Below, piece after piece: positions 51,265-55,210 of a stretch of 64,000 nucleotides of DNA. Below the pieces are notes generated by a model. The model worked only from the letters and a program-made list of their open reading frames with translations, did not search any database and was not told the DNA's origin. Position numbers and translations under genes: made by a program. The stretch is taken from NCBI RefSeq assembly GCF_006345805.1, contig NC_043008.1, positions 27,528,001 through 27,592,000 on the forward strand, written 5' to 3'. The stretch is from Octopus sinensis. Lineage: Eukaryota. Within the stretch, counting starts at the first letter, position 1; each line of letters starts with the position of its first letter.

Positions 51265-52020
51265 CAATAATAGTTCCCTTTTAAGTTACTTTAGTTTAGT
51301 TTAAATTAGTTTAGATAATATATTTTTGGTTATGTTGTCTAGGCTTTAATTATAGTTAGTCTTTATTTATATTTCTTTGTTTTAATTAGTTCATTTTTAA
51401 TGTATATATTTTGGAGGATATATTTATATGTTTATGGGTGTTATTTAGTGGTGTTTTTATTGAGTTTTGTATGTATGTGTGAATGTTTAAGATCCCTTTG
51501 TTTTTTGTTTTTTATTTGGTATGTTGAATTGAAAGATTTTATTGGGTATTGTCTGTTATAATAAAGTACACACACCCATAACAAATATAGGTACCCACTT
51601 CATTCGATGTACCTGGAATTGCATGTGAGCCTCGGCATATACACCTAACGGCCACTCCCGCCCCACATGGATAAATAAACACATACATCCCCAAAAATGG
51701 GCGTAATCCCATTCACACCAATTATATGTATACAATTATACACACTAGAATAATACATAACTAACCCAAATATACAGAACATACTAAAAATCACCAACTA
51801 ACCACTATCACAAATGAAACCCACACCCATACAATGACAAAATTCCCCCCTCCATACCCAATTTACACCCACATAGTAATCCCAATATATTCATCCATAT
51901 ATGGACGCAAGTGCGTGAAGCACATGCACACAATTAATAAGTACAACCCCCTAATACACACTTATATAAATTTGTATTAAGCTCGACATCCACAGTGATA
52001 AGATTACACCCACTCACACC

Positions 52021-52096
52021 CAGATGGGTGAATTGCACAACCAGGGAACGCACACATACACGTGTGTGTTTTTTGATTGTGCAATTCGCCCATATG
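52021..52096 (+). ncRNA. 35-bp hairpin, pre-miRNA-sized
   Basis: 33 of 35 positions pair (5 of them G-U), 6-nt loop; the wobble pairs work only on the + strand. Confidence 0.6.
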
Positions 52097-52419
52097 CATG
52101 TATGCGGGCGCGATAACATTGTTGCATATATCGAGCCTAAATAGCATGCATATGTACATGTGAGGGGTACACGCAAATGACGTGCGCGTGTACCCCCTGC
52201 ATTTATACCCGTGCGTAATATACACATGGAGACTACCACACAGGTACAAATGTGTATAGTAATGGGAGCCCCATCACTACACTCAATGTATACTCTCACC
52301 CATCCGCACGGATGTGTAAGTGTATCTCCGGTGTATATGTTGAGGCTTATATATATGTAGCGTTGTGGAGGTGAATGTCGTTGAAATTGTGAATTAATGG
52401 GTGGAATTGGGAATTGTAG

Positions 52420-55210
52420 CCGGGTGGTGGACTAGCGTTGCTTGGAATTGGGAATTGATTAGTGTGGTAGTGAGGTAGGCATCGGGAATAGGTTTGGGTT
52501 GCTGTAGGTTGTTTGTTAGAGCTGCTAGGGTGAGCTAAAGCTCATAAATGTATATAATGGTTTTTCATGGTAGTTTCTTAAAGAATCCATTCATTATAAA
52601 TTTTTTTACGTAGTGTTGGTTTGCTACGTGGATATAGTTTTAGTTCCATTTATTCTATTTCTCCATTCATAATTTAAATGACGTTTAATTTCTATGGCGC
52701 GTATTCTCTCTTTTTTTACATAAGTTATTTCTATGGTAACGTAATTTTGGTTTGGTTTTTTTAACGGCTAAGAATTTAATTTCACTTCATTATTTGAAAT
52801 TGACTTGTAGTATGTATTTTATTTATCCTTATGTCATATTGTTATTTTGATATTCTGGTTAATTACGATGTATTTAATGTTGTTTTCATAGGAGTGTTTA
52901 TGTATATGAGATTGTGTGTGAGTTTTTAGTTGTATATTTTATTTATCTGTATGAGTGTGGGTGTGTAAATATTGTTGTATATATCGAGTTTAGTGAGTAT
53001 ATATGTGAGTATATGTGAGGGAGTATATGTATCTGTTGTGTGTGTGTGTTTTTGTGTGTGTGTGTGTTTGTGTGTGAATGTGTATATGGGTTTGTTATTT
53101 AGGTTTTGGGATGTTTGTGTTAATTTGTTGTGTGGGGAGGGAGTGGGTTTTGGTGTATATTGAGGTTTATAAATTAGGATAGGTATGTGTATAAGTTGTG
53201 GGTCTGTGGTTTACGAGTGTGTATTTGTGTGTGAATGTTTAGGTTTAGGGGGTTTACTATATAGGTTTGTTATAGAGTTTAGTAAAGGAGATTTATCGTT
53301 ATATGCTTTTATGAGTTTTGGTTTATCATGGTTATTTCAGGGAATTCGTGGTAATTTGTCTATTTTCGATGTTGGTTGTTTTATTACATTGTTTCATTCA
53401 TAATTTTTGAGTGGTGTTCGTTTTGCCACGTGAATAACCGGGTGGTGGACTAGCGTTGCTTGGAATTGTGAATGGAATAGTGTAGTAGTGAGGTAGGCAT
53501 AGAGAATGGGTTTGGGTTACTGCAAGTTGTTTGTTAGAGATGCTAAGGTGAGCTAAAGTTCATAGATGTATATAATGATTTTTCATGGTAGTTTTTTAAA
53601 GAATCCATTCATAATAAATTTTTTTAAGTAGTGTTGGTTTGCCACGTGGATATAGTTTTTAGTTCCATTTTCCTATTTCTCCATTCATAATTTAAATGAC
53701 GTTTACTTTCCATGGCGCGTATTCTTTTTTTACATAAGTTATTTCTATGGTAACGTAATTTTGTTTTGATTTTTTTAACGGCTAAGAATTTAATTTCACT
53801 TCATAATTTGACACTGAATTGTAAGTATGTATTTTATTTATCCTTATGTCATATTGTTATTTTTGATATTCTGGTTAATTACGATGTATTTAATGTTGTT
53901 TTCATAGGTGTGTTTATGTATATGAGATTGTGTGCGAGTTTTTAGTTGTTTAATTTATTTATCTGTATGAGTGTGAGTGTGTAAATATTGTTGTATATAT
54001 CGAGTTTAGTGAGTATGTATATGCGTATATGTGAGGGTGTATATGTATCTGATGTGTGTGTGTGTTTTGCGTGTGTGTGTGTTTGTGTGTGAATGTGTAT
54101 ATGGGTTTGTTATTTAGGTTTTGGGATGTATGTGTTAATTTGTCTGTGTGGGAGGGAGTGGGTTTTGGTGTATATTGAGGTTTATAAGTTAGTATAGGTA
54201 TGTGTATAAGTCGTGGGTCTGTGATTTACGAGTGTGTATATGTGTGTGAATGTTTAGGTTAGGGAGATTGCTATATAGGTTTGTTATAGAGTTTAGCAAA
54301 GGGAGATTTATCGTTATATGTTTTTAGGAGTTTTGGTTTATCATGGTTTTTTTAGGGAATTCGTGGTAATTTGTCTATTTTCGATGTTGGTTGTTTTATT
54401 ACATTGTTTCATTCATAATTTTTGAGTGGTGTTCGTTTTGCCACGTGAATTTTATTTTTAATTCCATTTATTCCATTTCTCCATTCATTAATTTAGAGAT
54501 GTTCGTTTCCAGAGCGGTTATACTTTTTATATATATGTTAAGTTCCTTGGTAAAGTAATTTTGTTTGGTGTATATGTTGAGGCTTATATGTACTTCTGGG
54601 TGTGTGTGAGTGGGGTGGGAGTTTGTATTTGTTATGGGTGTGTGGTTTACGAGTGGTTTTGTGTGTGAATGTATAGGTTAAAGGAATTGCTATATAAGTA
54701 TGTTTTAGTGTTTAGTAAAGGGAGGTTTTATCATTTCTGTTTTGTGAGTTTTAGCTTATCATGGTAGTTTTATAAAATAATCTATTCATAATTTTTGTGT
54801 TTATTTGTCTGTGTGGGGTTGAGTGGGTTTTTGGAGTTTATGTTGAGGTTTATATGTATGTATTGGTATGTGTAAGTGGTGTGGGTATTTGTATATGTCG
54901 TGGGTGTGTGGTTTACGTGTGTGTATTTGTGTGTGAATGTTTAGGTTAGGGGGATTGCTATATAGGTTTGTTATAGAGTTTAGTAAGGGAGATTTTATCA
55001 TTATATGTTTTTATGAGTTTTGGTTATCATGGTAGGTTTGATAAGGAATTTGTAGTAATTTGTGTCTATTTGCCGATGTCTGTTGTTTTATTGCATTGTT
55101 TCATTCATAATTTTTAAGTAGTGTTCGTTTTACCAAGTGAATATAATTTTAAATTCCATTTATTCCATTTCTCCGTTCATAGTTTTGAGTGATGTCCGTT
55201 TTCTAGAGCG
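52420..55210. repeat. Hierarchical tandem repeat: two ~1015-bp units (52420-53437, 53438-54450) plus two shorter derivative units
   Basis: ccgggtggtggactagcgttgcttggaattg at 52420 and 53438; the terminal ~300-bp block recurs near 53150, 54170, 54570 and 54830. Confidence 0.9.

What the first reader, a model, noticed from the sequence alone, without database searches (positions are those of the whole stretch)
51560..55210. Giant sense-strand RNA fold-back in the ~4.5-kb 3' tail of a Penelope-like element
Composition flips from G/T-rich (51270-51560) to A/C-rich (51560-52010), then a balanced hairpin-rich core (52010-52330), then G/T-rich repeats to ~55660. The A/C block is a diverged inverted counterpart of the repeat unit, in antiparallel order. 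51661-51683 (ccccacatggataaataaacaca) pairs with 54796-54818 over 23 consecutive positions using 3 G-U pairs. 51570-51587 is the exact reverse complement of ~54626-54643. 51630-51697 matches 53103-53165 and 54119-54180. Differences that are G-U on the + strand would be A-C mismatches on the - strand, which points to selection on RNA structure rather than simple DNA inversion. One A/C arm has four alternative partners, and the tail ends in an intact hammerhead. PLE 3' regions are normally short. I do not know of a described PLE with this architecture; it may be a structured RNA module for replication or packaging, a dsRNA/small-RNA source, or a captured ncRNA.
Basis: partly seen in the sequence, partly recalled or inferred. 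Interest (0 to 1): 0.9.

Follow-up and report, generated by a model that had tools for sequence, protein, structure and literature searches.

The report
Long repeat-built tail of a retrotransposon
The region is the unusually long (4.5 kb) non-coding tail of a young, high-copy Penelope-like retrotransposon, built from tandem and inverted duplications; its RNA could fold back on itself, but nothing here shows that the fold is selected, so it is an odd structural variant of an ordinary mobile element.

Summary
There is an A/C-rich block (51560-52010), a palindromic core, then G/T-rich repeats. About 130 nt of the A/C block (51560-51700) is a diverged inverted copy of a module present 4-5 times downstream. 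G-U appositions outnumber A-C 69:9. The element (48641-~55810) is a Hydra-clade Penelope-like element with a TERT-like RT, a GIY-YIG nuclease, (TA)n target sites and roughly 700 copies. The tail is contiguous with the ORF in all 17 long copies examined.

The inference of selection on RNA structure does not hold. Counted as events, the G-U excess comes from one class: the arm has G where all modules have T, which reads as C loss in a C-poor (2.5-3.5% C) module. The other pair-keeping class (A>G 12) is no commoner than its pair-breaking reverse (G>A 14). Transversions and gaps break about 23% of columns. The local core palindrome shows no bias (7 G-U, 10 A-C). Fourteen copies show zero compensatory changes. 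About 77% of the predicted duplex energy for the rest of the block is compositional. Tail length also varies between copies.

Verdict: an expanded, duplication-built pseudo-LTR/3' UTR with incidental fold-back potential. Interest is modest.

The parts
48641..55810 (+). One copy of a ~7.2-kb Hydra-clade Penelope-like element, inserted in (TA)n. It is slightly 5'-truncated relative to the tandem unit junction.
   Evidence: Boundaries come from 17 other copies. (TA)n lies at 48620-48641 and 55807-55853. The arm 23-mer has 701 genomic hits at <=3 mismatches against 35 for the control.
48745..51264 (+). RT + GIY-YIG ORF, broken into three frames in this copy (48745-49068, 49199-50323, 50287-51264). 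An Asn-rich linker lies at 50287-50560.
   Evidence: It is a single frame in L038, with an ~859-aa open frame at C6:47401441. Homologues score E 2e-60. A model of homologue P0002 (pLDDT 79) has telomerase TERT as its best PDB matches. DKT, CxCX5C and CxxC...CxH motifs were read directly from the sequence.
51265..51559 (+). Proximal 3' UTR, T/G-rich (C 4.7%), with no inverted counterpart.
   Evidence: (z -1.6).
51560..51700 (+). A/C arm: a diverged inverted copy of the X-Y-Z part of the G/T module.
51701..52010 (+). Rest of the A/C-rich block (G 7.7%). Its complementarity to the G/T modules is weakly order-specific and mostly compositional.
51964..52159 (.). Central palindrome of the core (centre ~52058), followed by further hairpins at 52153-52207 and 52243-52361.
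   Evidence: One search counts WC 67, GU 7, AC 10, tv 7.
52330..52418 (+). Partial partner P0 (Y-Z part of the module).
   Evidence: (I14).
52417..53435 (+). Tandem unit R1 (1,018 bp). It contains the C-poor G/T module 52851-53330 with partner P1 at 53104-53241.
53435..54450 (+). Tandem unit R2 (1,015 bp, 93% identical to R1). It contains partner P2 at 54119-54261.
54451..55400 (+). Diverged partial units carrying partners P3 (54524-54649) and P4 (54791-54915), plus a further partial module at 55211-55400.
55406..55660 (+). AT-rich short tandem repeats (periods 7-31 nt).
55671..55716 (+). Hammerhead-like type I motif: CCAC / CUGAAGA / UUGUC-loop-GACAA / GAAA / short helix III / GUGG.
   Evidence: the only site in the element with this core. 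Unchanged apart from one 1-nt deletion across the 24 aligned sequences. Not called by Rfam.

Best explanation
The region is the 3' UTR, equivalent to the pseudo-LTR, of a young and abundant Hydra-clade Penelope-like retrotransposon. This UTR has been inflated from the roughly 0.1-0.3 kb usual for the clade to 4.5 kb by duplication. It holds two or three ~1,015-bp tandem units plus diverged partial units. Each carries a ~480-nt C-poor, TG-rich module. One partial module lies in inverted orientation (the A/C block) next to a ~190-bp palindrome.

Inverted and tandem junctions of this kind are what this family produces when it inserts, as head-to-head 5'-truncated pairs and partial tandems. I infer, but have not shown, that such a rearranged copy became a master element.

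In the sense transcript the A/C arm can pair with any of 4-5 modules, giving an imperfect duplex of about 130 nt at -117 to -136 kcal/mol. The rest of the A/C block pairs promiscuously with G/U-rich sequence because of its composition.

The G-U over A-C asymmetry is real. It arises because the G/T module lost its cytosines (C>T) after the inverted copy was made. It does not arise because pairing is maintained. The fold-back is therefore most likely an incidental consequence of the tail's duplication history. The functional 3' signals are the terminal hammerhead-like motif and the unit junction.
For: Identity of the element. The tail is contiguous with the ORF in 17 long copies at 94-99% identity. 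Many copies show 5' truncation, upstream partial tails and head-to-head partners. Most copies run past the 3' end into the unit's 5' start, which is the PLE 'tail' signature (PMC11167929). Clade motifs and the (TA)n target match PMC8557442 section 11. The fold is TERT-like.

The tail is plastic. Tails measure 1.2, 3.5, 4.3 and 5.1-5.3 kb.

The asymmetry reflects C loss.
- C is 2.5-3.5% in every module copy, against 28% in the A/C block.
- Arm G faces partner T 46 times and partner C 8 times.
- Deep branch: 10 arm-G/partner-T sites, 2 arm-T/partner-G sites, 0 A-C-type changes and 2 transversions. Within partner lineages: C>T 5, T>C 3, A>G 10, G>A 14, tv 51.
- Where a partner keeps C, the arm's G is ancestral.
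- C>T 15 against T>C 3 gives p 0.004. A>G 12 against G>A 14 gives p 0.72.

No sign of selection for pairing.
- About 23% of aligned columns are transversions or gaps.
- The core palindrome has G-U 7 against A-C 10.
- No pair has changes on both sides, and the covariation score equals the shuffled mean.
- 12 one-sided pair-keeping changes against 22 pair-breaking ones look near-neutral against my rough 25-35% expectation for pair-keeping changes.
- A shuffled A/C block still gives -180 of the -203 to -210 kcal/mol.
Against: - The arm-to-partner complementarity is well above chance (z 12.6). The + strand duplex is 19-47 kcal/mol more stable than the - strand duplex, so the fold could form in vivo.
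- The arm lineage shows few transversions (2) against 12 G-U-type transitions. Constraint on the single-copy arm, with relaxed constraint on redundant partners, would give the same picture.
- Within the family, the shared derived changes in the arm are A>G (51590, 51597, probably 51634) and C>T (51636). All of them keep pairing.
- The only variant lacking all G/T partners sits at a single locus, so dispensability of the partners for transposition is not shown.
- Why C was purged from the module, but not from neighbouring tail segments (9-13% C) or from the A/C block, is unexplained.
Confidence: 0.6

Rival explanations
1. One reading: the fold-back is a selected RNA structure, such as a replication or packaging module or a regulated dsRNA. 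G-U pairs are tolerated on the sense strand while A-C mismatches are purged.
For: - G-U 69 against A-C 9.
- 12:0 on the arm/ancestor branch with only 2 transversions.
- The + strand duplex is more stable than the - strand duplex.
- There are 7 runs >=18 bp on + against 1 on -.
- The MFE of the whole tail pairs the entire A/C block with the G/T units.
- Shared arm polymorphisms are pair-keeping.
- All dispersed copies seen keep arm and partners.
Against: - The excess is one mutational class, C loss, rather than both pair-keeping classes.
- Transversions and gaps break ~23% of columns.
- Partner lineages show no pair-keeping bias.
- The stronger local palindrome shows none either.
- There is no covariation.
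- The energy is largely compositional.
- Partner number varies from 2 to 3 units between subfamilies.
Confidence: 0.12
2. The G's in the A/C arm are fossils of A-to-I hyper-editing. The inverted repeat formed dsRNA, ADAR edited adenosines, and reverse transcription fixed them as G. That would explain the G-U pairs on the sense strand only.
For: - There are 10 sites with arm G opposite T in all partners, on a branch with few other changes. This looks like a burst.
- Shared A>G polymorphisms occur in the arm.
- ADAR hyper-editing of dsRNA is documented in molluscs (PMC6651903). That the host is a mollusc is my inference only.
Against: - At three arm-G sites one or more partners still have C, so there the arm's G is ancestral rather than edited.
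- Partner A>G (12) is no more frequent than G>A (14).
- The core palindrome, a better ADAR substrate, shows no G-U bias.
- The recent master-lineage spectrum shows no A>G excess.
- The arm is still 36% A.
Confidence: 0.08
3. The tail is not native to the element. It would be a captured host satellite, or a non-autonomous partner or nested foldback-type insert, lying between the ORF and the original short hammerhead-bearing UTR. The A/C block, core and P0 would be the insert's inverted termini.
For: - Hydra PLEs are normally <3 kb (PMC8557442), and a relative has its hammerhead 94 nt after the stop.
- 51562-51645 and 52330-52418 form an inverted pair around the core.
- The tail units show no similarity to the terminal hammerhead region (z about 0).
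Against: - Every hit whose flanks I could read (the loci, compared) lies within this element's tail. No free-standing copies were seen among the scored hits.
- P0 is simply another paralogue of the same module as P1-P4.
- Origin by capture and later internal duplication are not mutually exclusive.
Confidence: 0.15

Closest known systems
Hydra-clade Penelope-like elements (Craig et al. 2021, PMC8557442)
   Same: A single RT + C-terminal GIY-YIG ORF. It shares the DKT motif, an (R/K)W(K/R) motif, the CxCX5C linker, CxxC...CxH around the nuclease, insertion into (TA)n, a hammerhead-type core near the 3' end, and tandem and inverted insertion patterns.
   Different: The clade is described as generally <3 kb. 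This family is ~7.2 kb because of a 4.5-kb repeat-built UTR, with the hammerhead core 4.4 kb after the stop rather than ~0.1 kb.
Canonical PLE pseudo-LTRs and the 3' 'tail' signature (Frangieh et al. 2024, PMC11167929)
   Same: Partial tandem copies upstream. The 3' ends run a few dozen nt into the next unit's 5' region. Head-to-head 5'-truncated pairs are consistent with cleavage and extension of both target strands.
   Different: I did not find descriptions of multi-kb internal tandem arrays plus an internal inverted module in pLTRs in the papers read.
Non-LTR retrozymes / tandem hammerhead repeats derived from PLE pLTRs (bioRxiv 10.64898/2026.07.22.740005)
   Same: Tandemly repeated non-coding sequence associated with PLE UTRs.
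   Different: The 1-kb units here carry no hammerhead core and show no similarity to the terminal hammerhead region. They sit inside an autonomous element.
Inverted-repeat dsRNA in transcripts (for example inverted Alu pairs as ADAR substrates; my own knowledge)
   Same: Two diverged inverted copies of a repeat within one transcript, able to form a long imperfect duplex.
   Different: Here both arms belong to one retroelement's UTR. Editing or small-RNA production is untested, and the sequence footprints do not support editing.

Membership tests
Penelope-like element, Hydra clade | Telomerase-like reverse transcriptase | tested here: met
   Pfam, NCBIfam and PDB sequence searches were silent. 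An AlphaFold model of homologue P0002 (E 2e-60, 41% identical to this family's ORF; pLDDT 79) has TERT as its top PDB matches, then group II and retron RTs. The YRDD motif is present in the window ORF.
Penelope-like element, Hydra clade | C-terminal GIY-YIG nuclease preceded by a CxCX5C linker, with CxxC and CxH around it | tested here: met
   Read directly from the sequence: CTCRDKSNC, VVYKC...VYIGSTS...R..H, CYLC...CRH in 50287-51264. These positions are invariant in the 11-homologue alignment. No HMM hit is available.
Penelope-like element, Hydra clade | DKG motif modified to DKT; RWK motif in the N-terminal part | tested here: met
   SDKTRNLY at 49053-49256. IKWK in this copy and RW[R/K] in homologues.
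Penelope-like element, Hydra clade | Insertion into (TA)n; pseudo-LTR, tandem and inverted copy structure | tested here: met
   (TA)n at both ends. Partial tandem and head-to-head copies in L025-L041.
Penelope-like element, Hydra clade | Short element (<3 kb). This is typical of the clade, not strictly defining. | tested here: not met
   The unit is ~7.2 kb and the tail 4.5 kb.
Type I hammerhead ribozyme | CUGANGA...GAAA core with helices I, II and III | tested here: inconclusive
   The core and helices I (4 bp), II (5 bp) and III (2 bp, quasi-palindromic ACGAUUGU) can be drawn at 55671-55716. They are unchanged apart from one 1-nt deletion across the 24 aligned sequences. No Rfam hammerhead model matches at E<=10. 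The 10.1-11.1 pair is U-A, not G-C. The MFE fold is not the hammerhead. Cleavage is not testable here.
Evolutionarily conserved (selected) RNA secondary structure | Compensatory substitutions or covariation in the helices | tested here: not met
   0 of 106 pairs have changes on both sides. The score of 0.024 equals the shuffled mean, reached by 500 of 500 shuffles. Power is low at 96% identity.
Evolutionarily conserved (selected) RNA secondary structure | Excess of pair-keeping over pair-breaking substitutions beyond mutational bias | tested here: not met
   At event level, 27 against 17 (p 0.09). The excess is entirely C>T. A>G 12 against G>A 14. Transversions are abundant. The core palindrome shows no bias.
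Retro-fixed A-to-I hyper-editing | A>G excess on the sense strand in both arms of the duplex | tested here: not met
   Partner A>G 12 against G>A 14. The arm's G is ancestral wherever a partner keeps C. There is no bias in the local palindrome.

The most novel reading that the evidence does not exclude
The sense transcript really forms the kilobase-range A/C-to-G/U duplex in vivo, and the element uses it. Possible uses are to circularise or compact the long UTR for RT recruitment or packaging, or to act as a dsRNA decoy or small-RNA source that modulates host silencing or editing. Redundant partners would explain the relaxed constraint on each module, with constraint on the single-copy arm.
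Probability: 0.12. Interest if true: 0.7.

Novelty: new variant of a known kind. Interest (0 to 1): 0.3.

Why it matters
If the ordinary reading is right, this is a useful annotation. It documents a Hydra-clade PLE family whose UTR grew about 20-fold by internal tandem and inverted duplication. It also shows that a strong G-U over A-C asymmetry between inverted repeats can arise from one-sided base loss without any structural selection. That is a caution for structure-from-sequence arguments.

If the novel reading were right, it would be a rare case of a retrotransposon depending on a kilobase-range RNA duplex. It would also give a tractable system for asking what PLE UTRs do, which is poorly understood.

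Tried and rejected
- Rfam at gathering thresholds and at E<=10 found no hammerhead or other family. Only sub-threshold miRNA-like hits appeared on CA/TG hairpins.
- Pfam, NCBIfam and PDB sequence searches on the ORF or its profile gave nothing. Identity was settled by homologues, motifs, the literature and a fold search instead.
- Idea: the tail is a multimerised hammerhead-bearing pLTR. Rejected, because no unit segment resembles the terminal 55211-55830 region beyond low complexity (z -1 to +2) and no hammerhead cores lie in the units.
- Idea: one long palindrome centred at ~52058 spans the whole block. Only the central ~190 nt aligns.
- Idea: ongoing sense-strand mutational bias or editing. 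Recent singleton and internal-branch spectra are roughly symmetric in counts.
- A global 'C-poor sense strand' explanation was weakened. Neighbouring tail segments have 9-13% C, and only the module family is at 2.5-3.5%.
- The minus-strand 165-aa frame 51934-52431 is open only in this copy.
- The deletion variant lacking the G/T repeats occurs at one locus only, so it is uninformative about dispensability.
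Full report
OBSERVATION. By segment:
- Proximal UTR 51265-51559: C 4.7%, T 55%.
- A/C block 51560-52010: A 40%, C 28%, G 10%.
- Core 52011-52330: balanced.
- G/T modules such as 52851-53330: C 2.5%, G 30%, T 47%.

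The two spot claims are exact: 23 consecutive pairs with 3 G-U, and an 18-nt perfect reverse complement. The repeat finder and BLAST show two ~1,015-bp tandem units (52417-53435 and 53435-54450, 93% identical) followed by diverged partial units. The first ~140 nt of the A/C block is a true inverted homologue of a module X-Y-Z. That module is present in antiparallel order in four full copies and one partial copy. Smith-Waterman score is 41 against 14.6+-2.1 for dinucleotide shuffles. The remaining 310 nt of the block is only weakly order-specific (38 against 22+-3.5).

WHAT THE ELEMENT IS. The window lies in a 2.7-Gb, TE- and microsatellite-rich animal genome. Both the A/C block with its core and the tandem unit are multi-copy at 87-100% identity. 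The arm's 23-mer occurs 701 times at <=3 mismatches, against 35 for the reversed control.

Comparison with 17 ten-kb loci defines a unit spanning window 48641 to about 55810. The ORF is contiguous with the tail in every long copy. There is frequent 5' truncation, upstream partial tails and head-to-head 5'-truncated partners. Both ends of the window copy lie in (TA)n. Most other copies run past the 3' end into the first ~90 nt of the unit. That is the PLE 'tail' signature attributed to internal initiation of reverse transcription (PMC11167929).

The ORF is split into three frames here, is a single frame in L038, and has an ~859-aa open frame elsewhere. It has no Pfam, NCBIfam or PDB sequence hit. 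It does have homologues at E 2e-60 that share these motifs:
- ADKT.N.Y
- RLI.P.K
- FD...YPSI
- GLYRDD
- SNHP
- CxCX5C
- (G)VY...YIG.S
- CxLC...CxH

These are the features Craig et al. list for the Hydra clade of PLEs: DKT, RWK, CxCX5C, CxxC/CxH, the (TA)n target, and hammerheads present (PMC8557442, section 11). A model of homologue P0002 (pLDDT 79, pTM 0.75) has telomerase TERT structures as its best matches, followed by group II intron and retron RTs.

The clade is described as 'generally short (<3 kb)'. A relative from another assembly (L042) carries its hammerhead core 94 nt after the stop codon on both copies of a head-to-head pair. Here the only hammerhead-type core in the element is at 55675-55701, 4.4 kb after the stop. 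It is unchanged apart from one 1-nt deletion across the 24 aligned sequences. It can be drawn as a type I motif with a short quasi-palindromic helix III, like the metazoan PLE motifs of PMC4209133. Rfam does not call it, and 10.1-11.1 is U-A.

CAN THE RNA FOLD BACK? Thermodynamically it can. Arm plus partner cofolds at -117 to -136 kcal/mol on the + strand. On the - strand the figure is -89 to -104, and with a shuffled arm it is about -72. The MFE of the whole 4.56-kb tail (-1241 kcal/mol) pairs the entire A/C block with the G/T units. The main helices are 51569-51649 with 54563-54644, 51650-51709 with 54103-54163, and 51867-51934 with 53035-53104.

An A/C-rich strand pairs with any G/U-rich strand, however. 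For 51701-52010 against a module, the observed energy is -203 to -210 and shuffles give -178 to -181 (z -3 to -4.7). The summed monomers give -105 to -109. So about three quarters of the gain is composition.

IS THE G-U EXCESS EVIDENCE OF SELECTION? Raw counts are striking: G-U 69, A-C 9. The five partners are paralogues, though, so I counted events with the arm as outgroup.
- Sites where all partners agree and differ from the arm: 10 have arm G against partner T, 2 have arm T against partner G, none is A-C type, and 2 are transversions.
- Changes among the partners: C>T 5, T>C 3, A>G 10, G>A 14, transversions 51.

Overall the G-U-type to A-C-type ratio is 27:17 (p 0.09). The asymmetry is entirely C>T against T>C (15:3, p 0.004). 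A>G against G>A is 12:14. Selection for pairing should favour both pair-keeping classes and disfavour transversions. Neither is seen, and 23% of aligned columns are transversions or gaps.

At three arm-G sites (51616, 51629, 51670) at least one partner retains C, so there the arm's G is ancestral. By extension the ten fixed sites are most simply C>T in the module's ancestor. This matches the 2.5-3.5% C of every module copy.

The core palindrome (51964-52159, 67 WC pairs) is a far better local helix. It shows G-U 7 against A-C 10. There is therefore no general sense-strand pairing or editing signature.

Across 14 copies, the arm-P4 helix has 0 of 106 pairs with changes on both sides. Its covariation score equals the shuffled mean. 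There are 12 one-sided pair-keeping changes against 22 pair-breaking ones, which looks near-neutral by my own rough estimate of 25-35% pair-keeping changes. Power is low because the copies are 96% identical. Recent substitution spectra, both singletons and internal branches, are roughly symmetric. The skew therefore predates this family's radiation.

PLASTICITY. Tails come in 4.3-kb (two-unit), 5.1-5.3-kb (three-unit) and 3.5-kb (internally deleted) forms. One 1.2-kb form lacks all G/T repeats. That last junction exists at a single locus as a tandem pair, so it says nothing about dispensability.

WHAT REMAINS IN FAVOUR OF FUNCTION. The arm lineage has few transversions. The shared derived polymorphisms in the arm (A>G at 51590 and 51597, probably at 51634; C>T at 51636) all keep pairing. 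All dispersed copies examined keep arm and partners. Constraint on a single-copy arm with redundant partners would mimic the event pattern. I give this 12%, and 8% to an A-to-I footprint reading.

ORIGIN. The units do not resemble the terminal hammerhead region, and the block is not one long palindrome. Whether the module was captured or arose within the UTR is open. The inverted copy plausibly derives from the head-to-head and tandem junctions this family makes at insertion (PMC11167929 reports cleavage and extension of both strands). That step is inference.

VERDICT. The tail is a real and atypical feature of this family. Selection on RNA structure is not supported, because the G-U excess is explained by cytosine loss in the G/T module. 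This is a new structural variant of a known kind of element, of modest interest.

Noticed in passing
window 28815-29318 (+) and 34005-34886 (-): Two fragments of a different, canonical PLE-type reverse transcriptase (RPI..., FDV.NLY..IPH, FLDD motifs; Pfam RVT_1 E 3.6e-7). They lie in opposite orientation about 5 kb apart, possibly an inverted PLE pair.
   Followed up: partly
window 59479-61119 (+) and 63124-63750 (+): LINE-like reverse-transcriptase ORF fragments. The first is split over three frames. Both are flanked by long Ser/Asn-coding simple repeats (62572-63033).
   Followed up: no
window 48082-48342: An almost pure purine tract (GC skew 0.87, AT skew 0.72) about 300 bp upstream of the element's 5' end. 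It is not part of the element in other copies.
   Followed up: no
L026, L028, L033, L035, L036; G000 C1:73548840/73555272, C1:176846577/176851634, C7:82403904/82408674: Copies of this family frequently occur as head-to-head pairs of 5'-truncated elements or with partial upstream tails. This matches the complex tandem and inverted insertions described for PLEs.
   Followed up: partly
L036-L041 relative to window ~51362-51412: A second subfamily carries a ~116-nt longer proximal UTR (local duplication). Its R1 and R2 units are more alike (96.8% against 92-94%).
   Followed up: partly
G000, many loci: A second, far more abundant Hydra-type PLE family is present. It has ~727-aa open frames and is 42-45% identical to homologue P0008 over the nuclease part, with 150 scored hits from >20,000 first-look candidates. 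Its tails could not be fetched.
   Followed up: no
window 52024-52093 and 52158-52202: Near-perfect hairpins in the core give sub-threshold miRNA-family hits (mir-3149 30 bits against a 100-bit gathering score). These are CA/TG low-complexity stems, not a confident call.
   Followed up: partly
window 50275-50556: (TAA)n-like repeats are read in frame as a poly-Asn linker between the RT and nuclease. Homologues from other assemblies have similar Asn-rich linkers of very different lengths.
   Followed up: no
window 51934-52431 (-): A 165-aa open frame lies on the minus strand across the core. It is open to only 92-144 aa in 18 other copies and has no family hit, so it is probably spurious.
   Followed up: yes
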